64,000 nucleotides of DNA from Octopus bimaculoides (taxonomy: Eukaryota): assembly GCF_001194135.2 (NCBI RefSeq), contig NC_068981.1, forward strand, positions 52,502,395 to 52,566,394, written 5' to 3'. Below, in pieces: positions 1,291-32,927 of the stretch. The notes below the pieces were generated by a model. The model was not told where the DNA came from, made no database searches, and saw only the letters and a list, made by a program, of their open reading frames with translations. Position numbers and translations under genes: made by a program. The stretch's first letter is position 1; every line of letters starts with the position of its first letter.

Positions 1291-1630
1291 CTCGGAAGGA
1301 ATCTGTTTTCTGTACATCTTCAGTATTTATTGCTCCTGTGCATCTGCCACACATAAAAACTGTCTTCCCGGTTAACTTTCCTTTGATATTGTTGCACCTT
1401 TTATGTAGCTTGCACAGGTACATCGTATAGAGTTTCTACCCATGCCTTTTCTACAGATCAAGCAGAGCCATCTACCTGAAGGGGTTTGTGATTTGTCAGC
1501 CTTCCTACTTACTAATACTTTGGTTTTTGCTTGGTTAACTCTAAGGCCCTTCGATTCTAGACCTTGCCTCCACACCCTAAACTTCATCTCTAGTTCTGGC
1601 AGTGAATCAGCTATTAGAGCAAGGTCATCC
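1291..1630 (-). mobile_element. RTE LINE RT fragment
   Basis: KFRVWRQGLESKGLRVNQAKTKVLVSRKADKSQTPSGRWLCLICRKGMGRNSIRC, homologous to 190-400. Confidence 0.9.
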
Positions 1631-2955: not shown

Positions 2956-3425
2956 AAGGATTTTATTTCTATGAGTGCTTTTACTTTCTAACACTCCTGT
3001 TTTTACTCATTTCTCAAGCTATTTTAAGAATTAAGGAATATCAGGAATAAAAGATTAAGTAAATATTTTGTTTTTTAATTTGCATGAATTAGAACCATGT
3101 AATTTTTCACATTTAAATTATGAAATATACTTTTTATATCAATAGTGCTATGCATTAGACATTGCACAGTTGAAAATGCCTTCACTTTATAGCTACTGTT
3201 CAGTTTGAACAACACCAACTATTGTTAGTATACACACACACACACACACACNNNNNNNNNNNNNNNNNNNNNNNNNNNNNNNNNNNNNNNNNNNNNNNNN
3301 NNNNNNNNNNNNNNNNNNNNNNNNNNNNNNNNNNNNNNNNNNNNNNNNNNNNNNNNNNNNNNNNNNNNNNNNNNNNNNNNNNNNNNNNNNNNNNNNNNNN
3401 NNNNNNNNNNNNNNNNNNNNNNNNN

Positions 3426-6289: not shown

Positions 6290-7432
6290 TAAAATAACAA
6301 ATAGATTCCAGGGTGAAAAACTAGAGGTAGTCGATAGCTTCCGCTATCTGGGCGACCAAGTTAGTAGTGGGGGTGGGTGCGCTGAAAGTGTAGCTGCTAG
6401 AATAAGAATAGCCTGGGCAAAGTTTAGAGAGCTCTTACCCCTGCTGGCGACAAAGGGACTCTCACTCAGAGTAAAAGGCAGACTGTATGACGCATGCGTA
6501 CGAACAGCCATGCTACATGGCAGTGAAACATGGGCTGTAACTGCTGAGGACATACGTAAGCTCGCAAGGATGTGTAATGTCAATGTGAATACCCGTCAGA
6601 GTGTAAGTATCTTGAGAGAAAAGCTGAACATTAGAAGCATCAGTNNNNNNNNNNNNNNNNNNNNNNNNNNNNNNNNNNNNNNNNNNNNNNNNNNNNNNNN
6701 NNNNNNNNNNNNNNNNNNNNNNNNNNNNNNNNNNNNNNNNNNNNNNNNNNNNNNNNNNNNNNNNNNNNNNNNNNNNNNNNNNNNNNNNNNNNNNNNNNNN
6801 NNNNNNNNNNNNNNNNNNNNNNNNNNNNNNNNNNNNNNNNNNNNNNNNNNNNNNNNNNNNNNNNNNNNNNNNNNNNNNNNNNNNNNNNNNNNNNNNNNNN
6901 NNNNNNNNNNNNNNNNNNNNNNNNNNNNNNNNNNNNNNNNNNNNNNNNNNNNNNNNNNNNNNNNNNNNNNNNNNNNNNNNNNNNNNNNNNNNNNNNNNNN
7001 NNNNNNNNNNNNNNNNNNNNNNNNNNNNNNNNNNNNNNNNNNNNNNNNNNNNNNNNNNNNNNNNNNNNNNNNNNNNNNNNNNNNNNNNNNNNNNNNNNNN
7101 NNNNNNNNNNNNNNNNNNNNNNNNNNNNNNNNNNNNNNNNNNNNNNNNNNNNNNNNNNNNNNNNNNNNNNNNNNNNNNNNNNNNNNNNNNNNNNNNNNNN
7201 GGCACATAAAAGACACCATTTCGAGCGTGGCCGTTTTCGTGCGGGTGACACGTAAAAGCACCCACTACACTCTCTGAGTGGTTGGCGTTAGGAAGGGCAT
7301 CCAGCTGTAGAAACTCTGCCAAATTAGACTGGAGCCTGGTGTTGCCATCCGGTTTCACCAGTCCTCAGTCAAATCGTCCAACCCATGCTAGCATGGAAAG
7401 CGGACGTTAAACGATGATGATGATGATGATGA
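6290..7432 (+). mobile_element. 5'-truncated RTE LINE across a gap, with (GAT)n tail
   Basis: QGEKLEVVDSFRYLGDQVSSGGGCAESVAARIRIAWAKFRELLPLL.., then the family 3'UTR and gatgatgat tail at 7412-7432. Confidence 0.92.
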
Positions 7433-8955: not shown

Positions 8956-8999
8956 TTTAAATGAAATTAAAATACAAAAAGCAATCTGACTATTTCAAT

Positions 9000-11892
9000 G
9001 ATTATACTGTTTTTATTCAAATATTTAGACTAAATAGAATTCAATGACAATGAATACTTTATTTAAAACAAATATTACAATAAAAAATCAACTTACAAAT
9101 TAAATACAAATGCAAATTATAAAAAAATAAACAAATGAAATGGTTTCAAATGCTCTCTGCTTATACTAGAAGCTCATTATAGTATCTGCACAACCCTTGC
9201 ATACTAAAAGCACATAATGAACACCATCTGCACCAGCCTCTTCAGTAGATCATATGCAATAATGTGGCTAGATATAAAACTAAGTAAAGAAGTTAGATCC
9301 TCATTATTAAACCACTTGGATATAGATTATTACTTTAAATTCCTAAAACAATGGTTATCTTTTCTAAACTAAACTTTAAAGAGTACAGTAGCTGATAATT
9401 GATAATTCTTATTAATAAAATTGTTTTGAAGTTAGTCAATGGTTTGCTGCCAGTTTGACAGAAAATCACAATTGTCAGTGAAGGTTTGCAGATATGGAAG
9501 CATATAAAGATAACAGTTTTGATTTCAATGTTGAGAGCAGATTTTTTTTACTTATACACAAGCATTAATTATCTGAATACATTAATGAATGAACAGTCAC
9601 TTCATTCATCATGCAAACACATAAGTATTTTTTAATATATATCACATGTCATTAACTATTTAGTAAAAGAAATTGCACATTGGATCCCAGGTACAGCAAT
9701 CATTTACAAAAGTCCAAAAGGTGAATTATATAGACACATACAACAAGACATGATGAGAAGGTATGTGTATAACTGACTTGGTTATTTAAAAAGAAATCTT
9801 CTATACAGATTCAAGATATAAAATAACTGCATGCAAAATTTGACAAAGTATGGTGAAAAATGTCTTTCAAAAAAAAAAAAAGTTGTACTCTTGGTAAAAT
9901 TAGATGTTATGGGGCACAGGCTTCATATTAATTATAATGATATGTGGCATGATTATGGGAAATAGGATGGCACTTTTTTTAGTTGAATTAATAAGAAAAT
10001 TAACTTTTTTGAATTTTAATATTTCTTCTTACTGATTTTAAGTGATAATTGATATAAAAGAAGTACATAGCAAAAATAAATTAAAAAAAAACAATCTTCC
10101 AAGTAGAATTTTATAACAGATGGAAGCATTTTAAACTGAGAAAATTTATAAAAGGTAAAAAATAAAATAAAACTTAATTACAAAGTACTGAGCCAGTTTG
10201 TTTATGATTTAATACATAAAGATATAAATTATCTAATGGAAAATTGAAAAAAATAATTTTGCAATGAATTGTCTTTGAAAAATGCCATTCTCAAGAGAAC
10301 CACACATTTGATTTTAGAAGAAAGTGGGTATATCTACACATTAGAACAGTAGCTATCAAATATGTTTATAAAGTAAGATAAATTTAAGGCAGATCTTTTA
10401 CACCAAATGTTTTTGTTTCTGTTCTTAATAAATATGACTTATAAATAATTTGCAAACTAAAACAAAGACTGAACTTTTAATTTTACTTGGAAATGATACT
10501 CAAAATAAATATTTTTGTATAGGTGGATAGAGTATAAAATGTAATATAAAAAAAAATGGGGGGAGGGGAAAATAACATTTGAAAGGAAACTTATTTTATG
10601 GTGATGCATGTGAAACAAAATTTGAGTTTAGTGATACTAAGAAGGCAGTTGAGACCAATAATAAACACAAATTTATTTGATAATGTAACATTACTGGTTA
10701 ACTTTTCATTTGTTTTCTTTTAAATTTTAATTCTTGATAAATTACTGTAAATGTGAAATACATGAAGTAATTCCATATGAAAATAAATTTAGACAAGAAA
10801 ATTTTAAATGAACTGGTAACTTTAAAGAAGGTTCTATGCTTAATAAAAAACAAAACAAACTTTATAATGGCAAAGAAAAAATATCCAAGTAATACAACCG
10901 GTGCTTTATCGTTTTATATTCTTTGCAGAGAGTGAACATGTTTTTTTTTTTAATCTTTAGTAATAAAAGATAGTCATTGGATAGAATATCAACTGCAATT
11001 AGTCAGAATTATAGAATGCATAAGATTTTATATCTATTGATATAGTTCACTTCTTTACCAGTTAAGAAGAAACCAATCTAGTAATAGAATTTATTTTACC
11101 ATCAAAAATATTTACAAAGAATAACAATGAAAATAAGATGGCTAGGTGTGCCTAACAACAGTTCTAATCCTTTATCAATCTTTATCAGTATCTTTCAACA
11201 TATTGCTTATTGTTTTCCATTATGTCACATGACCAAAGCTATTCTGGCTTCAGAAACTGTATAAATAGCACATATTTCAGTTATCAAAATTATTAAAATG
11301 AATAATTTGAATGTAAACCACTTCACTTTCATGCTCTTTCTTTCTCTCTATGTATCAGAGAACATGTGTAATTTTATTATCAAGAAATGGTTAATGTCTA
11401 AACTAAGCCACATAAATTTTAAAGACAAAACTTATAAATTGAACATCTGTTCAAAAATTGAATCTCTCAGATATGAATGCTATGGGAAGATGAAGCATAT
11501 GATACAGTTAGTAAATATAGAAATACATGATCTTGTTTTATGTTGGTGAAAGGTATATGTAATTAATAAAAATGATTCTAATGTTCACATTAGAAGTATT
11601 ATTATACTAGTGCTGATTTGGCAAACGTCTGGCACTAGGATCCAGTTAGGAAGATGACAATGAAAAATTGTGGTAGATTGGATACAGAATATTACATTCC
11701 AAAAAAGATGACACCCTAAAGAATTGAAAATGATAGCTGAAAAGAGAAGTCATGTTGAAAATACTGGAGAGTGAGTGAATGCAGTTTGTTGCACATTGCT
11801 GACAGATCCTGGTCAGTCAGAAAGTTATTGTTGTAGTCCTCCCAATAAAATTGTGGAACCATAAACATTCTTTTAGCAATTTCACTTCCTTT
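9000..11892 (-). other. Probable long 3'UTR of the septin with several polyadenylation signals
   Basis: U-rich on the minus strand with no recognisable TE. AATAAA (plus tttatt) at 10672-10677, 9058-9063 and 9012-9017. The end position is inferred. Confidence 0.6.
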
Positions 11893-11926
11893 TCAAAATA
11901 TGGACTTCTTCTTATCTTTCTTTGTA
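11893..11926 (-). CDS. SEPT7: Septin-7-like canonical terminal coding exon ([D]TKKDKKKSIF*)
   Basis: Strong acceptor tatttttcattttattttctgcag. Phase 2 matches the 26830 donor. Basic tail ending in IF resembles SEPT7 KKKGKIF and peanut KKKGLF. Confidence 0.88.
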
Positions 11927-14900
11927 CTGCAGAAAATAAAATGAAAAATATTAAAATTATATCAAAACAAAAAAAATTGAAAGTATTAAATCATAAAACT
12001 TTTTTTCACCAAATTTCCATTGGAAAGTGAAAGAATAATTGGAATTAAAGAAAACAATATTAGTTTTTCTAAATGAATTTCATGTAAATGTAGTCAATCT
12101 CTCCCTAATATAGAGACTGACTCAATGCAGACAGTTTCTTAGCTGTGGAACAGAATCAACTAAACAAAGATTTGCAGGATATATTTTCAGAGTTTTTTTT
12201 TTTTAATGTATACTTCACAAATATAAAATTATATTGATAAAACCTTATCTTATATTAACAATGAGTAAATTTGGTAATAGCAAAATAGCTAACATATATT
12301 TTTAAATAATAGAAATACCGAATGATTAAAAATAAAATAAAATATATAAAAAATATAAATTTGGAACTATTTTGTTTCAGACAACCAATCCCAAAGACAT
12401 ATCTATGAAAGAACAGCATCAGAAGAAAAGAAAAATCAGACATCACAAACAACATAGACAAAACATATATGGAAACACTATGACCTTATAACTAGTTCAA
12501 TAATTTATTTTAAAAAACGTGCAACAAAAATGAAGTAAAATGATGATAAACTAACTGAATATAATAAATACTTAAACAGAATCAAATTCATTGAAATTCT
12601 TTTTGGTAACTTATTTGAAATTTGAAAGTTTATGAATTTATTTACGGTGCTCCAACATGGCCACAGTCAAATGACTAAAACAAGTAAAAGAATAAAAAAA
12701 CATCCTCTAAAACAGAAACGGCACTATAAAACATGTAGATTTTTTTCTTCTAAAATTCTTTATAATACTAAGGTATATAATTGATTGAACTGACCTCAGT
12801 GTATATCAATAACAGATGTAGGAAAGAAAATGAGATTTAAACTCTAATACACAGTACACTTAACTAAATTGCAGAAAAAAACCCCCATAATGTCTTGATT
12901 AATACTGAACACCAATATACAAATTATATTCATTTAAATAAAATGACAACTTTATTTTAATGCTATACTACAGAATATAACTATCATTTTTTTTTTAGTC
13001 CACACTATGCATGAACACAGACATTTTCATGGATAGGAAAAGATGAATCAGTTGAACTAGTTTCAATCTTGTGTTGAGATTTTATCAATGACTGAGTAGC
13101 TCTTTAACTACCCACAGAGATACTGCTTATAAGCATACTATTATTAATGGCTTAAATAAAAGATATAACACATTCTTGGCAGGTAGTTTGATTATTAAAA
13201 TACAGGTACATTGACAGTGTTTGGTTTCAAAGCTGTATCATACTATAGAATATATATTATATATACATTCTTAACCAACATTAAGAACAGACAGATGTAA
13301 ACATCTTGTCTGTATATACAATATCTTTACAGACAGAAAACTTTGTATATTACAGACAAGGTGTTAATATCTGTCTATTCATAGTGTTAGCTAAAAATCT
13401 ATAGGTATATTCTATAGTACAATACAGCATTGAATCAATACAGTTAACACACTAGTAATTCATTAATCCAAATTTACTTTTAAATTCTTTCAGAAAAAGA
13501 ATACATGAGGCTCCAGTATAAACTACTTTGAAAGTAGGCAAAGATATCTACACTGTTACAGGAGATTTTCGTTCAAACAAGGTACACTGCTACAAATAGA
13601 AATTAATGTCATTCAATAAAAATAGACAAAGAAAACAGGAGATTCTTGACAGTTCTGATGGAAATAGATGAAACTAAAATTTCAGAAGCTATCCAACCAA
13701 CTGCAATTAACCACCATTTCAATTTTGTTCTGTTGACAAAAGAAATTTCACAAACTCAAAATCCCATTTCAATATTGGAATCAAAGAAATGTCTATCCTC
13801 CATATTAAAGCAGAACTTATAGGAAGGTTTTTACCTTAGTGTTAATGCAAGCCAATGAAAGAGCTCTTATGTGGTCACTTAACTACTAGAAATAGCTGCT
13901 AGATCTCTTACAAATTACACCACACCATCTTGAAAAGAGAGTAGTATATTGACAGATACACAATACCTAAGAGAAAGATGGTTTGGTTGCAACTAAACAC
14001 CTTTGATTACAAGGTCTGCTCAATCAAAGCTTTCCAGGGACTAAGATGCTGTTGTACATCCAAGAAGCAAGTAACTTGGAACAATGTTGTAGATAAAATT
14101 AAGTGTGTAAACGGTTTGGAAGTAGAAAAAAAATGTAGTAGAGATTATATGAAGAGTTTAGATGACACTACATTTACTGAGCTGGAGTGAATGTTAATGG
14201 CATGAAAAAAGTGTAAAGTGCCCGAGACAAATTAGGCTGTTATGGGAAAGAAATGCTGTCAAAAGTAGAGATGTAGTCAAGGGCTAATAGTAAGAGAAGC
14301 TTATATTATCACTACAATACAATCATTGAACATATGGTATGAGGCAGAGAGAGTCTATAATCAGTAGAGGAAATAAAAGTTTCAGATATTAAATAAAACA
14401 ATGATATGTAGGCAGAGAAAATTGCAAGACAACCTTACAAATAAAAGAAAACAACTATCTTGCATTTGTTCTGCATGTTTATAGTTGTTGTTTACTTCCA
14501 TGTCAGCTTCAACTAAGCAAAACCTAGGAGCAACCATGACAATCCTGTCCTCATAGATCTGAGATTACATTATCCAATGTGTCCTTCACTTTTAAAGAAT
14601 AATTTTAAGGATATTTGGCTGTTAATTCTCATAGGTTATGTAACCATGTAGAATCCCATTTGTTAACTCAAAAGGCTAGGTGAGGCTGAATGGCTTATGA
14701 GAAATTTGCCATGTAAAAATGTGCAATAAACGTCAGAATCAACTGCAAACCCAATGAAGAATTTATGTATGTAAATATAGTTTAGCCTGCTTTGAAAGAA
14801 ATCATTAGCTGAAAATCCAAGTTATAATTTCAAAGAAAGACTAAATGTGTTTTATAGTCATAAAATTCATGGATTTCTATTATGTGTAGTTTATCTAACA

Positions 14901-16098
14901 ATTAACTTCAAATATTTTTGTCAAACATTTTCTATGTCGACCAGAATCCTTAGTTGTGTACACAACCCTTTAGCATTCAGATTAGAATGACATTGTAGGA
15001 GACGTGTGAGAGGCTGGATCTGGCTGGTTTAAATAAGACAGAATGAGATGGACATGATTAAAGCAGCGTGTGTTGAGAATTGGCTATATTAATTTTATAT
15101 TAATTCCATTCAAATCAGCTAGATGTCATTATGTGTTGAGAAATATGTTTTACTTTAAAGAGTTCTTTGGATGGGATAGTATGAAGTGCAGGAAAAGCAA
15201 AAACAAGACAGGGAACCAAGATATCAGTAATAAGAGAACAGAGAATCTTGTAGTGATAGAGAAGGCAACCAAATAGAAAAATAAGACTTGATAAAAACCA
15301 TTTAACACACACACACAAAATATTCTGACAGGATCAAAGCAACTTTTGTAAGGAGTGTGTGGTGCACATAATTAATTAAATCAAAGTATAATCCTGGCAC
15401 TGATTTTATCAACTTCAAAAAGAGAGAAAAAGAAAAGACTGAGTTTAAATTGAGTCTGGAGGAAATAACTGCTATCTGGCCCTGAATGGTAAGAAATATT
15501 GAATAGATAATGATGTTTTTCATTAATCTTTAACATCTGTAGACTGATCTACTACACCAATTCAAAATAGAGTCTCTAGCTAAAAAAGCACACATCCAAA
15601 ATATAACTGTTGACACTTGAACTATAAGGGAAATATTTGTCATTATTATACTATATGGCCTGATCATAATAGTTGTAAGATGAAACAAAATAAAAACCCT
15701 ATATCAATGAATAGTATAACCATTGCACCAAAAATAATGATAAAAGATAATATATCAAGTTTGAAGATTTTTAAAATTAATTATTGAACTTAAATGATTT
15801 TCGTTTGATACAGAGCAAAAACAAAATAAATAATGTATTACTCAAGACATGAGAATCTAAATTTCATTTATTTTACTTGTTTTTTTTTTTGTAATTGAAA
15901 AAATAACAACAAGGCAGCAACTAAAGCTCTGAAATCATGCAAAGGAATGGGTTTGAGGCAGTAACATGAAGGTATGTATATATGAAGATGACAAGGTTCT
16001 GAAGAAAAACGAAAAAAAAAAAAAAAAAACCCTCATCTAATAATACATACAATCTAATCTGTAAATGTAAAACTGTTCCAGAATATTCACAGCCTTAC

Positions 16099-16235
16099 CC
16101 ACAATAAGGACAACACACGAAGCTCAAATGCTGAATAGCAGCTGCTAAGCAGGATGACACAGACATACAAAGGACACAATACAAACCACATTGGTTTCCA
16201 CTTAGCAGGGTAAGACACACAAGTTGCGAAAGCCA
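16099..16235 (-). CDS. Candidate 137-nt Cys-rich alternative cassette exon ([D]GFRNLCVLPC* if entered in phase 2)
   Basis: Acceptor aaatattttcag, donor TGG|gtaagg. GC-richer island. The two other frames are open throughout. Confidence 0.55.
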
Positions 16236-19200
16236 CTGAAAATATTTGAGACAAATATTCACTATATCACAGGAATAGGTGAGAATATGCAAGCTAGATG
16301 GGATCAAGCAGTTTGAGAGAAGAGAGGAACCTCTTGAATAGAGGCTGTGCATAATTGAAAAGCATATTGTTCTAAATATTAGTCATACAGATTCTCAACT
16401 GAAATAAGCATATTTGTAGGAATTAAATTCCTTATAAGCAATTTTGAATTTAATATAAAATGACTAATAATAAGGATAATAATGAAAATATACATTAAAT
16501 TTTTTTAAGACTAAAAAATAAATTCATTTTTTAAAAATCAGGACGAACAGAATGACTACAGAAAGAAACAAAATTATTTGACATATATCATTGAAAATGC
16601 AAATAATAATGTATAATCAATTAATTTCTAGAAAAATAGATACAATGCCAAATAAAAAAATTTAAGAAACAAAATAGTAATCAAGGAATAAAATAGAGAA
16701 ATTAGGTTTTATTCTCAAAGAATAAAGTTTGTGAATGAATATATTCTTTAAAATAGACAGGAATAATAGGCCTTATTTCATTTGTTTTATTTTATACAAA
16801 GGTTTTCTCTCTTTGTGAAAGGGCAGTGTAGAGATGTGCATGAAAAATTATGGTTATACATATATATATATATATATGGCTGTGTAATACAGATACTGAA
16901 TGCAGAGAATGTGTAATAATTGGGAAGGAGAAATGAATTCAGTATAGTCTGTTGAATTTCCAGTGTTAACCTGGAAGAAAGGTGGAGCAGAAGTGAGTTG
17001 CAAAAGCAGCTGGGGTATCAAAGGCATTGGCCAATATATGCAGGACAGGTGACTGCTTCAAGATGTCATATCAATGGATGATGCATGCAAGTGAGGAAAA
17101 GTTATGAATTGGTCAAATTATAACTTTACACAAACCAATAAATATTTGGGAAAAAATGCCTGATTATGTTAAATTCTTATAAATAGGATGCCAGTAGACA
17201 GACAATACAATTTTGTGGACCCATTGCACTATATAATTCAAATGGTAATCTATACTGCTGATGGTAATTATAAAGATACTTTCAATATTGAAATATGTAT
17301 ATACACTGAGACACTTTTGAACAAAATTTGAAACATTCTAAATATGGCAATGAATCTAATAATAAACAATTATCGATAACATTCATAATGGTCAATCCAA
17401 TTGAGTAGGCTTTCATCAGATATATTTAAAGAAAAGTAATAAAACGAAGCTGTTGAAGAAAAGCACCTTTTTTAGAATAACAAAAGTATGTTACACCATG
17501 CCACTCTATCTTTCAAATGGATGAGACAAAAATTGGTGTATCACAGGTATCTCTTGTTGTTTTTTATTTTTCTAATTTCATATAATTTCCTTTCTTTTTA
17601 GAAGGGTGGGTAGCTGGCCCAATGGCTAAGCACAATTCTTTTGAAGAAAATTACTTTTTTCTGTAGGGAGAATTGCATACTTTAACGTAAGCCAACAAAA
17701 ATTTACCAATATTATAGGGCTATCACTGCTTACACAGCAATCTATACCACCATGTGGTAGCCATTTAGAATTAGGTGGACTCATTGCAAACTAAACTATA
17801 AAAGAAAAAGGAAGTAGTAAAATATTTTGCTTTAACTTTTTGAAAATCAGTCAAAATCTTTCCTACAATTGAAAAAGGTGCTTAAAATCACAACATTTAA
17901 GTTGTATGAAGAGGTTAAAAATTATCCTAACTTTTAATGAAATGATTTTTAAAATTACTAGAAGAAATACAACACACCAAACAAATGGCTCACTATATAC
18001 ACATTCCAGAAATAATGACACTAAAATATTATTATCACTTACAAAAAAACTTTGAGAGTACAACACAATAATCCTTTATAAAACTTGTAAGACAAATCAG
18101 AAGAAAAACCTAAAACACAAACCCTCCTCACAAAAGACCAAGATGCAGCAACAATTAATGCATAGGTTATGACAATTTAGTTAGTTGAACTGTGACATCA
18201 TATAATACCAAACATGACCAACAATCAAGTTTATTTTCAAAATATGAAGCATCCAATACACAAAATCATTATATCAAGTTTGGAAAAATATATCCTGTAA
18301 AAGAATGAATACTGAAAACATTGGCTTAAACACAATATGAATCTTACACATTAGATAATACAAAGGAAAACCAAGCCCTACATGTTCAAAGAACTTGAAA
18401 TTTACGTGCCATCACAATCATGATTCTGATACCTCCATATCTCAAAGAAGAAACAAATAGGAAATTTTTGACAGACTAACATCTTGACACTCAAATGTGA
18501 TTTTTCTTGTACTATTACTTGAAAATATTAATCTGGTTATAGGTTAAATCCTTAAATCAGTTAAAAACCCAGTGGAAATATACATGGAAAAATTTAGAGG
18601 CTACTTTATGTAATACTTATCAGTAACATTGTGATATTTTTTTTTTATCATAGCAGTATGAATAGAAATGAATTTATTTGCACATAAATTATTGAAGCAA
18701 CTGTGTTTACAATTAGAAGTCCTTCTACAAGCACCTGGATAGTAGCAATATCTACATTTACATTGTTGAAATGTTTTTAATGCACAGTATATATTTCCCC
18801 CAAACAACATTTTAAACTTAACAAAATTAGAAAACTAATCTAGTATAGCTATCAAGATAACATTCTTATCGTCACACATCATCATATTATCAATCACACT
18901 AAGATATATCTTTCTTGTATCTGAAATATATCTTCAATACTACAGACACTTTGTAAAAATGTTTATCAAAGTAGCTTACAGCATTATTTTATTAAAACTA
19001 CAGACCCATATCAGGCTTTATTACATTTTTGTAACTCATCACATTGTAATATTAGTCAGAAGTATATCAATTGTTATTTTCATATTGTAACCAAACTTTT
19101 ATTCATATTTCTTCATTTACAGAATCTTATATATAACTTCTTCATATATTCCACTGGTCATATGAATTCTTTTTATTTTAAGGCTCGACAGCCAATCAAA

Positions 19201-19870
19201 ACAGAAATTTACAGAATTTTTTGATTGCCTGCACACATACACACACACACAAAAAAAAAAACGAGGAATCATTTATACTTTAAATATTTTCTTTTTCAAA
19301 ATACACCATCATCATTCAGTTGTCAATTTTGAGGCCAACTAGAAAATCACAAAGGAAATAATACATAAGGAACCAAACGTGCTGCTAGACCTTTTGACTT
19401 ACTGTATAAATTTAATACAGATATTTTCACCAGTGAAATTGATTAATTATTAAAGCATGTGTTAATATAACTCCACTTATTTTTAAAGATGTAGTGAAGA
19501 TGTCAGTAAATAACAGCTATGGTAAACACTGTTTAGATTCCAAACAAAGTGCTGAAGATTCAATAAATCTAATGACCAAACAATCAGAAGCATCAACATG
19601 TCAGTTTCATATAAATATGAATAAAACGTTAGTACATGCTAATCCAGTTCTTAATTTCACAGCATGTGTAATTATACAACTGGATTACATATCTGACAGA
19701 TGACACGGCCGAGGCAATTTTTAGAAAAAGGAGATGAAAGGGTTATAAAAAAAGGTCATGCCAATAACATGCACTCGAATGCTTTCAAAGCATGATGGTT
19801 GTTTTAGTATTCAGTGGTTTTGATTATAGTTACAATTTCTTATCTACTTCACTAGCATTTCACGACATAC

Positions 19871-19935
19871 CTGCTCTCCTTGTGATATTTTGATCGATTT
19901 AGCGTTTCAACCGAAAAAAAGTAGACCAGGCCGCA
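19871..19935 (-). CDS. Candidate 65-nt alternative septin C-terminal cassette exon ([D]AAWSTFFRLKR* if entered in phase 2)
   Basis: Acceptor gtttctttcgctttcag, donor CAG|gtatgt. Locally GC/CpG-richer than the flanks. Also open in phase 0 (CGLVYFFSVETLNRSKYHKES). Confidence 0.6.
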
Positions 19936-20702
19936 CTGAAAGCGAAAGAAACTTTACCAGAATGGAATAATGTTTCCTTAAAGTTTAGATGCAGGATGAA
20001 GAATGTTAATGTAGTAGATATTACTACTGGAAATAACCTGTTATTGTATCCTCTTTAAAGGGCTTTAGTAGGTTAAAAATATTTCAAAATTTTCTTTGTC
20101 TTTATTCTTTTTTTACTCTCTTTGGAAAGCAAGATAAAAATTACCCAAACTGTTAGAGGGATTATGTGAGGTATCAAGGGAATTCAGACTTCAAAGAAAA
20201 TAATTCAATTAATTAATAATGTTAATTTGTTAAAAAGAATTAGTACATTAAGAAAGAATCATATATATATTTTTTACAGACATAAAGTAATCGTGTTTAG
20301 TGATTAGAAAAGAATTTATTAAATATAATTATCTCCCCTTAGTTTTATGATATGAAACTAATACTGAAGACTATTTCCATAGCAAGAAAATAAATCTCTT
20401 AAGTTACATGGTATATAAGTGCTAAAATATATCAAAAGTAATCCTTCCAATAAGAATAAAAGATCATTACTGATTTAGTGTTATCCAGTGTATTTTGTAA
20501 AGCAAAATGGTGAAAGGATTAACTGTGAAGCTCACATTTCTCATTTAAAATATAAATTTATTCAAATATCACATGGTTGCATTTATGTATTGCAGCCATT
20601 GTAAAATTTTATCACTGATAAAATGCCAGATGCAACAGGAAAATGTTTTATTCATATTAGACACTAGCACGTAATTTCAAACAAAGCTTTTTTTTTGTTT
20701 CT

Positions 20703-21036
20703 TTTTACAGGTTTTCAATCATTAGACTGCAGCCACACTGGGGCACTGCCTTGAAGAATTTTATTTATTCTTTAAAGCCTGGTACTTATTCCATCAGTCT
20801 TTTTTGCTGAACCACTAAATTATTGGAACATAAACAAGCCAACACTGGTTGACAAGCAGTGGTAGGGGCACAATCACAGACATAAACACATACAGGCTTC
20901 TATAATATATACTCACAAGGTTTTGGTTGGCCTGAGGCTATAGTAGAAAACACTTGCACAAGGTTCTACACAGTGGGACTGAACCTGAAGCTGGAACCAA
21001 GTGGTTGGGAAGCAAACTTCTTACCATACAGCCATA
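20703..21036 (-). mobile_element. CORE-like SINE (degraded)
   Basis: Homologous to 5766-6120. Confidence 0.82.
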
Positions 21037-21074
21037 CCTACATAAACATAGCTAAAAAGGCTGTTTGTTAAGAA

Positions 21075-21470
21075 TAATAGCTGTGTGATTAAGAGACTCA
21101 CTTTGTAACCACATGGTCTTGGGTTCCATCCTGCTGGGTGACAACTTGGGCAAGTGACTTCTACTGTAACCCAGGCTGACCAATGTCTTCTGAGTGAATT
21201 TGGTAAACAGAAACTGAATGGAAGCCCATTATTTGTGTGTATACACACACACACACACATACACACACACACACACACATATATGAATGCATGCATATGT
21301 GTCTTTATGTTTCTGTTTGTTCCCAACACGACCACTTGACAACTAGTGTTGGTTTGTTTACATCCCCATAATTTAATAGGTTCAGTAGAAGAGATCAATA
21401 GAATAAGTGTCATATTTAGAAAATAAGTACCCCAGTTTGGCAGCAGTCCAACGACTGGAAACAAGTAAAA
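21075..21470 (+). mobile_element. CORE-like SINE (degraded), inverted relative to the 20703 copy
   Basis: atagctgtgtgattaag...cttgggcaagtgacttctact...gactggaaacaagtaaaag. Confidence 0.82.
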
Positions 21471-21712
21471 GGTAATATTATGATACTTATACCAGTGCTC
21501 AGTAATTATACAATTATACACCCAACCACCTGGGGCAGTCAACTTTCAAGTTAAGAAAGCATGCTTATCTTGACACTTGAAAAGAAAATATAGCTTAGAA
21601 TTAAAATAAATTATGAAAATAAGATACAAAGCTTACAACATGTAGAGCAAGCAAGCAAGAAAAGCTCCTCATTGGTTTTGATTCTTAGTTGATGTAAGTT
21701 CATTTTACTTAC

Positions 21713-21764
21713 ACCATTATTACCCTTGTGGAAGGTATGAAAGTTGCAATATCCTATTTCTCCT
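21713..21764 (-). other. Candidate 52-nt cassette exon ([E]GEIGYCNFHTFHKGNNG), phase 2 to 0
   Basis: Acceptor ctgtattttag, donor GGT|gtaagt. Open in the phase-2 frame. Confidence 0.38.
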
Positions 21765-22499
21765 CTAAAATACAGGGTCTTTGCAACTAGTCACGCGAAT
21801 CAATAAAAAATAAACTTAAGAAAACTGTTAAGAAAGATATAACATTGACTATATTGAAATACAAGAGCATCTATTTTCTAGTAAAGAAATCAAATACAAT
21901 TATAAATGTAAACCCAACATTTACTACTTACGAACATATGTTCATATTAACACTACTATTCTAACCCTTGCCAGCACACTGAGAAATGCCATTTTAATAA
22001 TATGTATAATATATTTGCAAACATTGATAAAAGTTTCTCTTCCCACATTACATGATCCATTGTATCTTTTTTAAAGTTAATTTGGAACAGAATCCCGTGG
22101 TTCTCTAAATGGTTACAATTCTGAATTGCTTCTAGGCAAAACACAAGTTAGGAGACCTATGCAAGCTTTCACACATTAAATGATCTATTTAATATGCTTT
22201 TAACTCTGAATGAAAATGTCCTGAAAACTAGTTTCAAAAGCTAATACTAGAGAAAAAGTTCCAAGGAAGTTTAATATTCTACCTCTTTTGTAAAATATAT
22301 ACTGCTTATGTAATTCACAACCCTGGATACACTATAACATTATATCTAAATGAAGATGTTGAGAAAAATTTTATGTAAAGATATGTATTAATTGTATGAA
22401 TTTTTATTTCTAACGTGACTCCTTCCTTTATGATTGTTAGTGCTTAACTATGAGCAGTTTAGTATGAATGAAATACACTAGAAACACAGCAATACCGCT

Positions 22500-23030
22500 T
22501 CATAAAAAATTAAGTATCATCTGAGGAATGGTATTAGCAGAATTGATGGAGAGTAGGTTGTTATGTATAAGAGAAAGAATATGGGAAACAAAACTGAAGC
22601 TAAAGATCACACTGGAGTCAAAGTGTGGGTCAAAGAGAACTCTATTAGTATGCTCTGCAGTAGTGCAATCTGACAAATGAATGGAGCCCACAGGCAGACA
22701 GTTTTGGCAAGAGATTCATGTACAAGACATAGCTGAAAGCTTTGCCAATATCAGGGGCCACATCACTGCTTTCATCAAATTTCTTGAGGGTGAGATCCCA
22801 CTTGTTAGTGATATAGGAAGAGTGTGGATCTCCAGTAAATCTGGTTTTATGTACTGGTGACCATTAGGGAGCGAGAAAGATTCAAGTGTTGGAGAATGTT
22901 GTTAATAGCTGTTACCATCACCTTTAAGACATTGGAAGTGTACGTATGTATGTAATAGAATAGTTGTTGGCGGGATTAGAGGAGTTGCCTTTCTTGAGAG
23001 GGGCACACATTGATTGTGTTTCTAAAGATT
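22500..23030 (-). mobile_element. CR1/L2/Jockey-type RT relic
   Basis: PLKKGNSSNPANNYSI and VAPDIGKAFSYVLYMNLLPKLSACG resemble PI.KKG..S.P.NYRPI and ALDISKAFD.VWH..LL.KL. Confidence 0.72.
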
Positions 23031-23699
23031 GAAAGTAGCACAATAATGGATAATAATTTCTTGAAAGTTGTTTTAATCTTATTTAGTGTTACTGAAAAAC
23101 AAAAAAGTTGCACAAGTACACATTTTCATCCATCCATCTATCCAATCATCACAACATCAATATTTCTTATCTTTTATAATTGCTCTATGAGGTTTGCTGC
23201 CTTCTATCGTGGTGCTCAGAGGACTTCTAATTGTTCAAATGTTGATAAATCATGTAAAATTAAAAGTATGTAGTATATATGATGGTTATTGATGTTATTC
23301 TAAATATCTGGTTTTAACAATAGAAACATATTCTTAGCAAGTGAAGAGATCAAAGAATAAGATAAGATCCTTTAGTATCATCATCATTAATTTTGTCATT
23401 TATTTGATAGATTTGCAAGCTTGCTCATTTACTAGAGAAAGAAAGCTTATTAAAACCCTGATATAAATGTATCAATAGCTAAGATATGTTTTTACCAAAA
23501 TAGACTAACTGAAATCATACTGAGCTTTCATTAAAAAAACCAGTGAGGGAAAACAGTTAAATTAAAGAGGGCTTACAATATTTATAATTTCTAAAGACAT
23601 GTTTTCAAATAAATAACTACTCATTAGAGATGTTATAGGAGAGCATCAATATCTTGTAGAAATGCAAATAATGATAGACCAGTGAAGGTTAAGGAATTC

Positions 23700-24650
23700 A
23701 TATGCCAAACAGTTATAGCCTAATAATCCTGAACAACCAATTCTGAATGCTAAATCCCAAACATTGAAACTCCTCAAAATTAGAACCCTCAAAGGTTGAT
23801 ATACTGAAAACTCTTCGAAAACTCTCCATCTCAAATGTAATTAAAGATTAAAATCCAAAACAATTCTTGCATCTTGTTTATCTCTCTTTGACTTCATCCT
23901 TTTTGATGTATAAATGCCATTCTACACACTGCCTACAGAAATACAATCTTGAATTCAATGATTTACTGTCATCATATGGAAAGATATGGAAGACATAATC
24001 GGGGATGTAGTTTCAATATTAAACACTTTCGGTCTTTAAAATCAGTCATCACTGAATACCAAAACTGATTAAATTAAAAAAGTAATTAATATGGATAATA
24101 CAAAGGAAGTCATAGAATTGGATATTGCTCCAAAATATAGGTTAACATATACTGTCAAATGCACCACCAGTTGTTCTGCTACACAAACTCAAACTAACCC
24201 GTTGTGAAGCTGATGGTATGTTATGACTTCACCCTAAAGCTATTCATCACTGTACATTATACTTGCAGTAAAAGAACAGATGTATTCAATAGTTTAAGAA
24301 CAAAAGTATTTAATATTTAAAGAATAAAAGTATTTGACAAGGAAACTCTTTACATTCCCAATTCTTAAAGTTGCTGGAACCTATGTTCACCAATGAAGCC
24401 TATCCCTGAAATACACTTAAAATTTTTTTGAAGTAATTGTATTTTAATATGTTTCTTAAATAAATAAATCCCATTTTAAAATCATAAGAAATGTCCTTTA
24501 AGAATTTTTTAAAAATAATTTTTTTCCTGAAATATATTTTCTGGGGTTTTGAGATTGTGATTTTCAGCATTTGGGGATTCTGATCTTTCAGGATTTAAAC
24601 ATCTGGAATTATGTCATTTGGGACGTTTTTTGAGATTACACTCAAAACCC
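23700..24650. mobile_element. Non-autonomous MULE (Ricksha-like) with long degenerate TIRs
   Basis: Right end reverse-complemented reads gggttttgagtgtaatctcaaaaaacgtcccaaatgacataattccagatgtttaaatcctgaaagatcagaatcccc. A degenerate counterpart lies at about 23720-23800. Family assignment is from recall. Confidence 0.5.
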
Positions 24651-25032
24651 AGCCTAAGACTATGAGTGATCACAACATGATAAAACTCTTCAACTATATC
24701 ATTTGTTTATGCCAACTGGATGTAACATCACACCTAAAGTATGTATCAAATGTTTCTACTAGGATTAAATTATTTTGGGATTATATGTAAAGCTGTTAGA
24801 CAGATTAACAAACTGGTGAAGTAGACTACCATCACAAAATATATAGATAACTATCTTAGTTATTACAAATGGAAAACAAGGTAACATATAGCAAGGGCTA
24901 TTGTTCATAAACCTAATATTTCCATAATAGCAAATACCAACATCAGACCAAAATTATATAATATGAGAGATAAGCCAAAAGTACCACTTATACATCAGTC
25001 TTTTTCACACATTACATTGCACTTATGCTCAC

Positions 25033-25069
25033 TACTAAAATATCTAAAGTTGGCTGCAGTACCATGTCA
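25033..25069 (-). other. Candidate 37-nt cassette exon ([D]DMVLQPTLDILV), phase 2 to 0
   Basis: Acceptor ttttctctactctctacatag, donor GTA|gtgagc. Open in the phase-2 frame. Confidence 0.35.
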
Positions 25070-26376
25070 CTATGTAGAGAGTAGAGAAAATTTACAACGA
25101 AAATTGAACATTCAAGGTAGTTGCCTTAATAATAAAAGTTACACTAAACGATTTCCTTCTTGTTAAATAAACAATGTTTTGGATTAAGATTTGAGAACTT
25201 CTCACCTTTCTAAAATGAGAATATATAGCTAGATAAATAAAGAGAGAAAGCAGTAAGGATATTAATATGTTAATGTATACACCTTATAAACCTCCAGCAA
25301 CAACAACAACAACAACAACAAAAAAAAAACCTACTTCCAGTTTCTATGACAGTGGTACTATTTAGTAAAAAAGAAGCAGAGTGAAATTTTTATTTACACC
25401 CGTACTTCCAAAATACAAAAAACCCCAGAAAATACAAATAAATAGAATCAGAAATGTTAGAATTAACTTCAGTTGATCAATTTATTTGATTTTCATCTAG
25501 CTTGAGATAATACTTTATACCATTTAAATTTAAATATCTCATTGTAAGTTGATGTCTCATGAAATCAAGGATATAGCAATATTAAATCAACAGATCATAA
25601 AAAACATACAAAGCCAAATAACAAGTGTTACACATTTTTATTGATTTTTAAGTATTTTCATTAAAGGAAAACAAAGTGAAAATATTCAAAAGAAACAAAT
25701 TTTGAATTGCATTTTTTTTAATAAACTGAATTTTTTTTTTTTGTGCAATAAAAAATGAAAATATGGCCAGTTGTGATATACTCATGCAAAGAAATGGAAA
25801 ACTGCAACGAGACAGCGAGTCTGCTGAGAATAGTCAAGCACAGAATGTATTAACTGCAGATAACAAAAGAGGAAAAGATAAGCTAAACGTCACACACCTT
25901 CAGCCAAAGCATTCTAAATGAAGGAGAAAGCAACTGCTTAACAGGCAAAGCTTTCTGAATACTTGAAAAGGGGTTGCCCATCTTGTCTTTTACTCCTACC
26001 TGCTTTCAGAATATAGATTTTCTGGGGTTTTTTTTTCAGGAATGCCCTAGTACTCACCAAGTCAGGCTTCTGAACCCCCAACGAGTATATCCTTCAATGG
26101 TGTGTAAAATGTTGACTAACTTTTAGTTTAAGGGACAGAGGGAAGAGGTATTGAAAGTTCCATTTTTCTTTCCCATATGCATACCTAACATAACATCATA
26201 CTAATATTGTGTTGCTATTAGGTTCAAATAGACCACTGATGATTCTATGGACGTCTTACAAAAATTGCAGTAACATGTTTAACTTAAGGCAATTAGCTGT
26301 AGTAAAAGAATGCTCATCAAAACTGTTCATTTGCAAAAAATGACTTATTTCATATTATCCTCAATATATTTGAAGT

Positions 26377-26586
26377 TCAACATCTGAAAAGTTTTGGTGG
26401 TGCCTTGATATTTTTGTTGTTTCTCATTGTCTGTGGAATATTATATTTCTACTATTTAGTTTCCTTACGTGGACTTCACAACTGCTGACTTTTTATCAAG
26501 AGTTGCAACTGACATTATCAGCAATTTGAAAAACAAATGGAAACATGGTTTCCTTGGTTTGATTAGAGGATCGGCTAACACCACGA
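26377..26586 (-). other. Candidate proximal alternative terminal exon region of the septin (acceptors at 26586 and 26430)
   Basis: The 26586 acceptor gives DRGVSRSSNQTKETMFPFVFQIADNVSCNS*. The 26430 acceptor gives EQ* (phase 2) or TMRNNKNIKAPPKLFRC* (phase 0). Minus-strand AATAAA at 25637-25642 and 25481-25486. Confidence 0.4.
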
Positions 26587-26829
26587 CTAGGACGTGATAT
26601 ATAAGTTATATTTTCAGAATATATATAATTTAAGTTTATAAATTATCATACAGTTTAGATAATAACGAGTAACTGACATTTACATAAAAATTGTATTGCT
26701 AAAGAAATGACTTGCACTTATTTCCATGATCAAAAAAGAACAACATAAAATAGACATATATACTGGAGTGAGGAACAACAAAAGACTAGAGGGAAAATAC
26801 GGTAGTCTGATTAAAAGGTATTAACTTAC

Positions 26830-26975
26830 TCTTTTGTATTCTCCAGTGAGCGTCTTCTTTCTCCCATCTGCTCTTCCCAAGTGGATTTTTCTTTCTCAAA
26901 GGTAGCCCATTTTTCATCAAGTTCTTTCTGTTGTTGTTCTAAACTTTTCTTCATCTGCTCAGCTCTTCGTTGCAA
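26830..26975 (-). CDS. SEPT7: Septin-7-like coiled-coil exon (LQRRAEQMKKSLEQQQKELDEKWATFEKEKSTWEEQMGERRRSLENTK-GA)
   Basis: aattttag acceptor, GA|gtaagt donor, 146 nt, phase 0 to 2. Confidence 0.96.
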
Positions 26976-31485: not shown

Positions 31486-31852
31486 TCATCATCATCATTT
31501 AACGTCCGCTTTCCATGCTAGTATGGGTTGGACGATTTGACTGAGGACTGGTGAAACCAGATGGCTACACTAGGCTCCAATCTGATTTGGCAGAGTTTCT
31601 ACAGCTGGATGCCCTTCCTAACGCCAACCACTCAGAGAGTGTAGTGGGTGCTTTTACGTGTCACCCGCACGAAGGCCAGTCAGGCGGTACTGGCGACGGC
31701 CACGCTCAAAATGGTGTATTTTATGTGCCACCCGTACAAGAGCCAGTCCAGGGGCACTGGCAACGATCTCACTCGAAGGTCCTTACACATGCTGCGGGCA
31801 CAAGTGCCAGAAAGGAGACGCTGGGCACAGGTGCCATCACGATTTCGATTGC
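31486..31852 (-). mobile_element. Young RTE LINE 3' tail
   Basis: Near-identical to 55684-56050 and to the reverse complement of 7201-7432. Confidence 0.92.
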
Positions 31853-32306: not shown

Positions 32307-32927
32307 TCAGGTGTAGTGTTGGCAAATTTCAGGAAGCATGGCGGTTTTAAGGGAAGCAATGTCTCGGCAACTAACAACTGATGCCAGTAGTTTGTTCCAT
32401 GCTTCAGCAACTCTGAGTGTGAAAAAATGTTTCTGAAAGTCATGGGAGCTGTGCTGTTTTCTGACTTTGTAGGAGTGCCCATGTGTGTTAGACACATGTA
32501 GCTCAAAAAGGTGGTTGTTGGCGCAATGGTTAATAATTTTGTGGGTGTTTACTAAGTCAGTTGCCAGACGTTGGAACTTCAATGTATCTTTACTCAGGGA
32601 AGCAAGGTGTTCAGAGTACAGTAGATGCCTGATTGCGTGTCTCTGAACAGTTTCCAGGAGGTCATTGTCCTGAGCAAGATAGGTGTTCCAGACTGGTGAT
32701 GCAAATTCCAAGTGTGGCCACACCATAACCATATACAGCCTTAAATAAACAGCTGGAGAATGGCCGACAAAGGTCTTGCTGAGTAATGCCAAGACACCCT
32801 CGGCTTCCTTGACAATTTTAGAGATGTGCTTTGTCCAGTGCAAATCGCTGCTGACAGTAATGCCCAAATTACGTTCACAAGAAGACTTCTTGTTCCAAAT
32901 ATTACACACTATTAGAAAAGCTACCAT
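32307..32927 (-). mobile_element. CR1-clade LINE 3' end (RT C-terminal region)
   Basis: PHLEFASPVWNTYLAQDNDLLETVQRHA..THGHSYKVRKQ..KHFFTLRVAEAWNKLLASVV. Confidence 0.9.

What the first reader, a model, noticed from the sequence alone, without database searches (positions are those of the whole stretch)
11893..26975. Combinatorial tail-swap exon array in the last intron of a SEPT7-type septin
Seen: the coiled-coil exon exits in phase 2, and 15 kb later the canonical KKDKKKSIF* exon accepts phase 2. Between them are candidates with good AG/GT signals in two complementary length classes. Class 3n+1 (25033-25069, 21713-21764) is open from phase 2 and exits in phase 0. Class 3n+2 (19871-19935, 16099-16235) gives a short stop-terminated tail if entered directly, but is fully open if entered in phase 0 and then rejoins the terminal exon in frame. 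Example: 52+65 nt gives EGEIGYCNFHTFHKGNNGCGLVYFFSVETLNRSKYHKESSTKKDKKKSIF*. Established: septin C-termini can carry amphipathic curvature-sensing helices (Cdc12, SEPT6), and vertebrate tail diversity is mostly in the SEPT6 group. Inference: a frame-switch code that lets the single SEPT7 carry basic, aromatic-amphipathic or Cys-rich tails. Caveat: pseudo-exons arise by chance in AT-rich introns.
Basis: partly seen in the sequence, partly recalled or inferred. Interest (0 to 1): 0.8.

Follow-up and report, generated by a model that had tools for sequence, protein, structure and literature searches.

The report
Alternative tail exons of octopus septin-7
The last intron of the Octopus bimaculoides septin-7 gene holds two real, conserved, already annotated alternative exons that each replace the protein's basic ten-residue tail with another short tail, but the proposed four-exon frame-switching code is not supported.

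Summary
The window carries the Octopus bimaculoides septin-7 gene on the minus strand. The four candidates split into two groups.

**Real exons (65 nt, 19871-19935; 137 nt, 16099-16235).**
- Public gene models of three Octopus species enter them directly from the coiled-coil exon.
- The resulting tails are ...ENTKD-AAWSTFFRLKR* and ...ENTKD-GFRNLCVLPC*, replacing ...ENTKD-TKKDKKKSIF*.
- Both are conserved in Argonauta hians as well as or better than constitutive coding exons.

**Chance pseudo-exons (37 nt and 52 nt).**
- No isoform uses them, and Argonauta has no detectable counterpart.
- In O. vulgaris one has an 18-nt deletion and the other has lost its acceptor AG.
- Dinucleotide shuffles of the intron yield about four such exons.

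**The frame-switch code fails.** In Argonauta the two real exons are 63 nt and 144 nt, both multiples of three, and the second has no GT donor. The short phase-2 tails are nevertheless kept.

This is ordinary alternative use of 3' exons that switches the C-terminus, and it is already present in public annotation. Not settled: whether each exon is a cassette or a terminal exon, and what the tails do.

The parts
26830..26975 (-). Penultimate constitutive coding exon of septin-7 (end of the coiled coil, ...RRRSLENTK + GA). It exits in phase 2 through the donor GA|GTAAGT.
   Evidence: It matches residues 545-593 of O. bimaculoides septin-7 isoforms. Identity is 97.3% to O. vulgaris and 88.7% to Argonauta.
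19871..19935 (-). Alternative 65-nt exon. Entered in phase 2 it encodes (D)AAWSTFFRLKR, with the stop TAA at 19901-19899. The donor GTATGT lies at 19870 and the stop is 28 nt upstream of it. Probably a cassette exon that turns the canonical last exon into 3'UTR.
   Evidence: This tail is present in O. bimaculoides X1/X3/X4/X5, O. sinensis and O. vulgaris isoforms and maps at 19934-19902 with 100% identity. It differs from O. vulgaris by 1 mismatch in 65 nt. Acceptor, donor and tail are kept in Argonauta, which has an in-frame 3-nt deletion before the stop and a 1-nt insertion after it.
19530..20253 (-). Conserved island around the 65-nt exon, extending about 320 nt upstream and 340 nt downstream of it. 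Presumed splicing-regulatory flanks.
   Evidence: A 734-nt blastn alignment at 74% identity to the collinear place in the Argonauta intron. Alignment shown.
16099..16235 (-). Alternative exon. Entered in phase 2 it encodes (D)GFRNLCVLPC, with the stop TAA at 16204-16202. The exon may instead run on to a poly(A) site near 15850.
   Evidence: This tail is in O. sinensis isoform X3, P0126, and the window translation is identical. The exon is 100% identical to O. vulgaris over 177 nt. Its first 80 nt are 100% identical in Argonauta. In Argonauta the donor GT has become CT and the equivalent length is 144 nt.
15887..16313 (-). Conserved island containing the 137-nt exon plus about 210 nt downstream. 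An AATAAA lies at 15872-15867, just beyond the island. Possible 3'UTR of an alternative terminal exon.
   Evidence: A 461-nt blastn alignment at 78% identity to Argonauta. Sequence and alignments.
11893..11926 (-). Coding part of the canonical terminal exon. It accepts phase 2 and encodes TKKDKKKSIF*.
   Evidence: It is 100% identical to O. vulgaris and 97% to Argonauta. Decapodiform transcripts join the coiled-coil exon directly to it.
8970..11892 (-). Probable canonical 3'UTR of about 2.9 kb.
   Evidence: Collinear conserved blocks with Argonauta run from 11926 down to 8970, and an AATAAA lies at 9017.
25733..25936 (-). Third conserved island of the intron. It is non-coding and its role is unknown.
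   Evidence: 74% identity to Argonauta. Frameshifting indels occur between species. No Rfam match and no folding signal.

Best explanation
The 14.9-kb last intron of the Octopus bimaculoides septin-7 gene contains two conserved alternative exons. Each is entered directly from the coiled-coil exon in phase 2, and each stops translation after 10-11 codons. Three alternative C-termini result after ...RRRSLENTKD.

- **(a) Both exons skipped:** TKKDKKKSIF. This is the ancestral polybasic tail, shared in type with human SEPT7 (...KNKKKGKIF).
- **(b) Acceptor 19935:** AAWSTFFRLKR, aromatic plus basic, net charge +3.
- **(c) Acceptor 16235:** GFRNLCVLPC, hydrophobic with two cysteines.

Shown: the acceptors are used in public gene models, and the exons and their short tails are conserved across octopods.

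Inferred:
- The 65-nt exon is probably a cassette whose conserved donor splices on to 11926. The canonical last exon then becomes 3'UTR. Its stop lies 28 nt from the junction, too close to trigger nonsense-mediated decay (NMD) under the 50-55-nt rule.
- The second exon is more likely an alternative terminal exon with its own poly(A) site.
- The tails probably tune what the end of the SEPT7 coiled coil binds, such as anionic lipid or partner proteins. Tail (c) might be S-acylated.

The 37-nt and 52-nt candidates are chance pseudo-exons, and there is no frame-switch code.
For: **Annotation**
- Isoforms with tails (a) and (b) exist in O. bimaculoides, O. sinensis and O. vulgaris. Tail (c) exists in O. 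sinensis X3.
- The tails map exactly onto the window.

**Conservation**
- Only three islands of the intron align to Argonauta hians. Two of them are centred on these exons.
- Against Argonauta, the alignable 45 nt of the 65-nt exon are 97.8% identical, 118 nt of the 137-nt exon are 95.8% identical, and its first 80 nt are 100% identical. Constitutive coding exons score 88.7-95.4%.
- In Argonauta the only indel inside the tail-coding part is an in-frame 3-nt deletion. Indels after the stops are 1, 1, 1 and 5 nt.
- The Argonauta tails read DAAWSLFRLKR* and DGFRNLCVLPC*.

**Exon type**
- The donor of the 65-nt exon and about 340 nt downstream of it are conserved.
- The stop-to-donor distance is 28 nt in Octopus and 29 nt in Argonauta.
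- The donor of the second exon is lost in Argonauta. Conservation runs about 210 nt past it, and Octopus has an AATAAA just beyond that.

**Against the other two candidates:**
Against: - No read-level transcript evidence could be inspected. Use of the exons rests on gene models.
- Tail (c) is in a single model of a single species.
- Eighteen squid and cuttlefish transcript-derived proteins all carry the canonical tail, so the alternative tails may be confined to octopods or be rare.
- Nucleotide conservation continues undiminished past both stop codons. Selection therefore acts on more than the peptides, and could act on regulation alone.
- The tails are too short to show a significant amphipathic pattern.
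- The AATAAA after the second exon is not aligned in Argonauta.
Confidence: 0.75

Rival explanations
1. Regulatory, non-productive splicing. Inclusion of either exon mainly lowers or redirects septin-7 output, through NMD, a change of 3'UTR, or altered mRNA localisation or stability. The short tail peptides are incidental.
For: - Conservation is as strong or stronger after the stop codons. The first 80 nt of the second exon are 100% identical in Argonauta although the stop is at nt 32-34.
- Long conserved intronic flanks surround the exons.
- If the GTAAGG donor at 16098 is used, the stop lies 103 nt upstream of a junction.
- The post-stop sequence is UG/UGUA-rich.
Against: - The only indel within the tail-coding stretches is in frame, while indels after the stops are not.
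- Both tail peptides are kept across octopods.
- The stop of the 65-nt exon is only 28-29 nt from its donor, which is NMD-insensitive under the 50-55-nt rule.
- The encoded protein is otherwise complete.
Confidence: 0.18
2. A 3n+1 exon (37 or 52 nt) shifts reading to phase 0. A 3n+2 exon (65 or 137 nt) is then read through and rejoins KKDKKKSIF in frame. This would give a combinatorial set of long tails.
For: The arithmetic works in O. bimaculoides, and the predicted peptides are open.
Against: - The 37-nt exon has an 18-nt deletion in O. vulgaris.
- The acceptor AG of the 52-nt exon is AA in O. vulgaris, and its 2 mismatches in 52 nt equal the intron background.
- Neither aligns to Argonauta.
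- The Argonauta exons are 63 nt and 144 nt, so phase-0 entry would end in YKER*, and the second has no donor.
- No such isoform exists among the 26 clustered Octopus proteins.
- Shuffles give about 4 class-A pseudo-exons and about 9 frame-restoring combinations by chance.
Confidence: 0.02
3. The conserved islands are not exons at all. They would be intronic enhancers or an unannotated non-coding RNA, and the gene models that use them would be artefacts.
For: A third island (25733-25936) is conserved without being coding.
Against: - Acceptor AGs with pyrimidine tracts sit exactly at the start of the peak of conservation.
- Three separately annotated genomes call the 65-nt exon.
- No Rfam family matches and no folding signal is present.
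Confidence: 0.05

Closest known systems
Public septin-7 isoform models of Octopus bimaculoides (XP_014776063 X1, XP_014776064 X2), O. sinensis (XP_029656066 X1, XP_036355308 X3) and O. vulgaris (CAI9715008-13)
   Same: These are the same gene and the same three tails. The window encodes them exactly.
   Different: The models give only proteins here. They say nothing about function, about conservation in Argonauta, or about whether each exon is a cassette or terminal.
Alternative tails at the same junction in other protostome SEPT7 orthologues (public isoform models)
   Same: Splicing after ...SLEN.K[D/E] gives alternative ends in several lineages.
- Snails: SPTSRAKKWMSLK and relatives.
- Mytilus: an in-frame cassette, SHDTNMSSTTGKRVVNS.
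- Hymenoptera: TGSMSSEGS...HPEHP.
- The sawfly Cephus cinctus: a cassette DHFFRFLKR combined with either of two ends.
   Different: In Cephus and Mytilus the cassettes are multiples of three and keep the frame. That makes their arrays truly combinatorial without any frame switch. In Octopus each alternative exon terminates translation. Homology of the exons between phyla is untested.
C-terminal amphipathic helix of septins (Cdc12; Cannon et al. 2019, as cited in PMC8099429)
   Same: It is a membrane-directed element placed after the coiled coil at the C-terminus. Tail (b) is likewise aromatic plus basic.
   Different: Tail (b) has only 11 residues, and its hydrophobic moment is no greater than that of its own shuffles. 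No membrane data exist, and the element lies in a SEPT7-group rather than a Cdc12/SEPT6-group subunit.
Septin isoforms with transmembrane domains (Perry et al., PMC10690161)
   Same: An isoform-specific terminal extension changes membrane association. Some of these domains are C-terminal, as in Carlito syrichta SEPT10.
   Different: The only transmembrane-like octopus reading is the phase-0 frame of the 137-nt exon (WLSQLVCLTLLSG...). That frame is not the one used, and it is not preserved in Argonauta.
Poison or 3'UTR-switching cassette exons with highly conserved flanks
   Same: Very high nucleotide conservation, including non-coding parts, and a stop codon inside the exon.
   Different: The stop of the 65-nt exon is too close to the junction (28 nt) for the classical NMD rule, and the encoded tails are conserved as peptides.

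Membership tests
SEPT7-group septin | Septin-type GTP-binding domain (Pfam PF00735) with G1 GxxxxGKS, G3 DTPG and G4 AKAD | tested here: met
   The exons read [16 protein letters not shown] and VAKAD. P0001, whose tested segments (P-loop, micro-exon and C-terminal exons) the window matches at 91-100% identity, carries PF00735.
SEPT7-group septin | Best relatives are SEPT7/Pnut orthologues, with a long C-terminal coiled coil ending in a short polybasic tail ...KKxKKxxF | tested here: met
   The top 120 hits are almost all named septin-7 or peanut. The tail TKKDKKKSIF compares with vertebrate KNKKKGKIF and insect KKNKKKGLF.
SEPT7-group septin | Occupies the SEPT7 position in hetero-oligomers | not testable with these tools
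   This needs biochemistry.
Alternative 3' exon that switches the C-terminus | The exon is used in transcripts or gene models | tested here: met
   The 65-nt exon is used in models of 3 species and the 137-nt exon in 1 species. The 37- and 52-nt candidates are in none. No read-level data were available.
Alternative 3' exon that switches the C-terminus | Conserved above intron background, with splice sites kept | tested here: met
   Met for the 65- and 137-nt exons. Not met for the 37- and 52-nt candidates. The donor of the 137-nt exon is not kept in Argonauta.
   One has an 18-nt deletion and the other has lost its acceptor in O. vulgaris. Argonauta has no counterpart, and about 4 such exons are expected by chance.
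   The Argonauta exons are 63 nt and 144 nt.
   None occurs among the 26 members of the two Octopus protein clusters. No octopus C-terminal fragments appeared in a dedicated search.
Septin C-terminal amphipathic helix | A helix long enough to lie on a membrane, with a clear hydrophobic moment | tested here: inconclusive
   Tail (b) has 11 residues and muH 0.50, and 28% of its own shuffles reach that value.
NMD-coupled poison exon | Stop codon more than 50-55 nt upstream of the last exon junction | tested here: inconclusive
   The 65-nt exon has 28 nt, so the feature is not met. The 137-nt exon has 103 nt, but only if its Octopus-specific donor is used. The rule itself is established for vertebrates.

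The most novel reading that the evidence does not exclude
The octopod tail exon encoding AAWS(T)FFRLKR may be the cephalopod form of an ancient protostome alternative micro-exon at the end of the SEPT7 coiled coil. Possible counterparts at the same junction are the sawfly cassette D-HFFRFLKR, the millipede ...SSFVKLRR... and the cockroach FKLRFARF. On this reading the last SEPT7 intron is a conserved tail-swap hub that exchanges the polybasic end for an aromatic-basic motif binding membrane or partner proteins. Insects would use it combinatorially, and octopods as a terminating exon.
Probability: 0.15. Interest if true: 0.55.

Novelty: already known. Interest (0 to 1): 0.22.

Why it matters
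SEPT7 is the single, central subunit of animal septin hexamers and octamers, and its coiled-coil end faces neighbouring filaments and membranes. Octopods switch that end between a polybasic tail, an aromatic-basic tail and a cysteine-containing hydrophobic tail. If the switch is functional, it is a simple handle for testing how the extreme C-terminus affects membrane binding and filament pairing.

The exons are conserved as strongly as constitutive coding exons, so the switch is probably under selection. The isoforms are already in public annotation, however. The part of the finding that would have been new, a frame-switch code, does not hold.

Tried and rejected
- **Short-fragment protein search.** A search with the C-terminal 132 residues, meant to find transcript-derived fragments with other tails, returned only short proteins from other taxa and nothing from octopus.
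- **Failed locus look-ups.** The O. bimaculoides and Sepia loci span more than 100 kb, so no DNA was returned. Two shorter Octopus isoforms (O. vulgaris P0140, O. sinensis P0126) and the Cephus isoform are not on record. Decapodiform genomic conservation and the sawfly exon structure therefore went untested.
- **Decapodiform transcripts L003 and L004.** These show only the direct junction from the coiled-coil exon to the terminal exon. Nothing in them resembles the alternative exons.
- **RNA structure.** Folding gave no signal for the three islands (z = -0.1 to -0.5). Pairing between the coiled-coil exon and island 25733-25936 was no better than for shuffles.
- **Rfam.** Matches fell far below threshold and lay only on an AC microsatellite and an AT-rich palindrome. 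None fell in a conserved island.
- **Pfam on intron ORFs.** Nothing was found, including for the 174-residue ORF at 21024-21545.
- **Generic splice-site weight matrices.** They scored the true coiled-coil acceptor at -10.7. They describe octopus sites poorly, so I used them only to set thresholds for the chance estimate.
- **Hydrophobic moment of the tails.** Not informative at 10-11 residues.
Full report
**What the window is.** The minus strand carries a septin gene. Its exons read [15 protein letters not shown]......[15 protein letters not shown]...[14 protein letters not shown]..., VENLEHNDFIALRNMLIR and a long coiled coil. An assembled translation hit septin-7 of Octopus bimaculoides at 97% identity. 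The differences come from one residue I guessed wrongly and from an alternative micro-exon I had omitted. tblastn of the O. bimaculoides isoforms places the P-loop exon and the C-terminal tails at 100% identity, and the other tested segments at 91-98% where the alignment runs past a splice junction. The window is therefore the 3' two thirds of the O. bimaculoides septin-7 gene, which spans 155 kb in the chromosome assembly.

**Check of the observation.**
- The coiled-coil exon 26975-26830 is 146 nt and ends AAAAGA|GTAAGT, so it exits in phase 2.
- The terminal exon begins at 11926 and reads T|ACA AAG ... TKKDKKKSIF*, with the stop ending at 11893.
- The candidates are 37, 52, 65 and 137 nt, all AG/GT-flanked, with the stated frames.
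- The 52+65 example translates exactly as written.

**What public gene models show.** I read all 26 members of the two protein clusters that hold the Octopus septin-7 isoforms. They carry three C-termini after ...RRRSLENTKD:
- TKKDKKKSIF, in O. bimaculoides X2, O. sinensis X2 and O. vulgaris.
- AAWSTFFRLKR, in most O. bimaculoides and O. sinensis isoforms and two O. vulgaris proteins.
- GFRNLCVLPC, in O. sinensis X3 only.

The second tail is the 65-nt candidate entered directly in phase 2 (mapped to 19934-19902). The third is the 137-nt candidate entered directly. No isoform contains the 37- or 52-nt candidates or any frame-restoring combination. It is my own knowledge, not tested here, that RefSeq models of this kind are normally built on RNA-seq intron support.

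**Comparison between species.** I obtained the whole orthologous loci of O. vulgaris (L001) and Argonauta hians (L002).

*O. vulgaris.* The last intron is 95.4% identical in ungapped columns, with 6% gap columns. At that distance:
- The 37-nt candidate loses 18 of its 37 nt to a deletion.
- The 52-nt candidate has 2 mismatches, both amino-acid changing. That equals background, since 28% of intron windows are at least as similar. Its acceptor AG is AA.
- The 65-nt exon has 1 mismatch.
- The 137-nt exon with 20-nt flanks has none over 177 nt. Only 3% of intron windows are that similar.

*Argonauta.* The intron is unalignable except for three islands: 25936-25733, 20253-19530 and 16313-15887. The last two are centred on the 65- and 137-nt exons, and the 37- and 52-nt candidates have no counterpart. 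Constitutive coding exons of this gene are 88.7-95.4% identical to Argonauta. By comparison, the alignable 45 nt of the 65-nt exon are 97.8% identical, 118 nt of the 137-nt exon are 95.8% identical, and its first 80 nt are 100% identical.

**The frame test.**
- The Argonauta 65-nt exon has a 3-nt in-frame deletion before the stop and a 1-nt insertion after it. Its length becomes 63 nt and the tail reads DAAWSLFRLKR*.
- The equivalent of the 137-nt exon has insertions of 1, 1 and 5 nt, all after the stop.

The phase-2 short tails are preserved while the 3n+2 length class is not. A phase-0 reader would leave both Argonauta exons in phase 0 and read YKER* in the terminal exon. This is the opposite of what a frame-switch code predicts. 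It is what is expected if the short tails are the products.

**Chance expectation.** I set splice-score thresholds at the level of the weakest candidate.
- The sense strand of the intron then holds 130 AG...GT pairs of 20-200 nt, of which 8 are 3n+1 and open from phase 2.
- 54 ordered frame-restoring combinations exist.
- Dinucleotide shuffles give 3.9 +/- 2.7 such 3n+1 exons, with P(>=2) = 0.81, and about 9 combinations.
- Open frames of these lengths have probability 0.16-0.44 given composition. The 137-nt exon is open in two of three frames simply because it is 15% A.
- My generic matrices fit octopus sites poorly, so these numbers are order-of-magnitude only.

**How it most likely works.** Skipping both exons gives the ancestral polybasic tail.

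*The 65-nt exon.* Using acceptor 19935 gives tail (b).
- Its GTATGT donor and about 340 nt downstream are conserved.
- Its stop lies 28 nt (29 nt in Argonauta) from the donor.
- I infer that it is a cassette spliced on to 11926. The canonical last exon and its conserved 3'UTR of about 2.9 kb then become untranslated. The stop is too close to the junction for NMD under the vertebrate 50-55-nt rule.

*The 137-nt exon.* Using acceptor 16235 gives tail (c).
- The donor is lost in Argonauta.
- Conservation continues about 210 nt beyond it.
- An AATAAA follows at 15872-15867 in Octopus.
- I therefore lean towards an alternative terminal exon, but this is not shown.

*Function.* What the tails do is inference.
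- Tail (a) has net charge +4.
- Tail (b) is W/F/F/L plus R/K/R, net +3.
- Tail (c) is hydrophobic with two cysteines.
- The position after the coiled coil is where yeast Cdc12 carries its curvature-sensing amphipathic helix (Cannon et al. 2019, as cited in PMC8099429). Isoform-specific terminal membrane segments are known in other septins (PMC10690161).
- At 10-11 residues the hydrophobic moment is not informative.

**A serious rival.** Selection may act mainly on regulation rather than on the peptides, because nucleotide conservation does not drop after the stop codons. I give this rival 0.18.

**Wider context.**
- All 18 squid and cuttlefish transcript-derived proteins end in ETKKDKKKSIF. 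Two such transcripts join the coiled-coil exon directly to the terminal exon. The alternative tails may therefore be octopod-specific or rare.
- Alternative ends at the same junction are common in public models of other protostomes: snails, Mytilus, Hymenoptera, cockroaches, a millipede and Limulus.
- In the sawfly Cephus cinctus an in-frame cassette D-HFFRFLKR is combined with either of two ends. That array is genuinely combinatorial and needs no frame switch.
- The sawfly motif resembles octopus tail (b). Whether this is homology is untested, and it forms my novel case.

**Verdict.**
- Two of the four candidates are real, conserved and already annotated alternative exons. The other two are chance pseudo-exons.
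- The combinatorial frame-switch interpretation is contradicted by the comparison between species.
- What remains is an ordinary, though well conserved, case of alternative 3' exon use that changes a short C-terminal tail.

Noticed in passing
window 25733-25936 (minus strand): A third island of the last intron is conserved with Argonauta at 74% identity. It is pyrimidine-rich with three conserved YAG sites. Frameshifting indels between species rule out coding, and there is no Rfam match and no folding signal. Its role is unknown.
   Followed up: partly
window 39388-39417 (minus strand): A 30-nt alternative micro-exon, tttcag|AAAGAC...TTCAAG|gtatgt, encodes KDLKSGKFFK within the G domain. It is present in the X1/X2 isoforms and absent from X3, and is 96.7% identical in Argonauta.
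   Followed up: partly
P0004/P0006/P0208 versus P0203/P0209 (squid and cuttlefish transcript-derived proteins). The equivalent codon lies in window exon 26830-26975.: Transcripts within one cluster differ at GERRRS versus GERGRS in the coiled-coil exon. This R/G difference, of the AGA->GGA type, looks like A-to-I recoding.
   Followed up: no
P0091-P0100 (Cephus cinctus), P0086 (millipede), P0052 and P0054 (cockroaches): Arthropod SEPT7 orthologues have alternative cassettes at the same junction. The sawfly cassette D-HFFRFLKR combines with two different ends and resembles the octopus tail AAWSTFFRLKR.
   Followed up: partly
window 8970-11892 (minus strand): About 2.9 kb after the canonical stop is collinearly conserved with Argonauta at 74-81% identity, and an AATAAA lies at 9017. 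This is probably the full 3'UTR.
   Followed up: partly
window 1375-1629, 32310-32933, and several sites such as 31568-31660, 55763-55900 and 58562-58717 (minus strand): Transposon debris is scattered through the window. It includes a weak reverse-transcriptase fragment (RVT_1, E = 0.0097), a 208-residue ORF with no Pfam match, and repeated copies of a short interspersed element whose translation reads ...[23 protein letters not shown].
   Followed up: no
window 3252-3425, 6645-7200, 35360-35501, 52567-53518: Four runs of N mark assembly gaps. None lies in the last intron.
   Followed up: yes
window 19912-19935 (minus strand): A weak internal donor, CG|GTTGAA, lies just before the stop of the 65-nt exon. 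It would make a 24-nt in-frame cassette (21 nt in Argonauta) giving ...DAAWSTFFR-TKKDKKKSIF, the same size as the sawfly cassette. There is no evidence that it is used.
   Followed up: no
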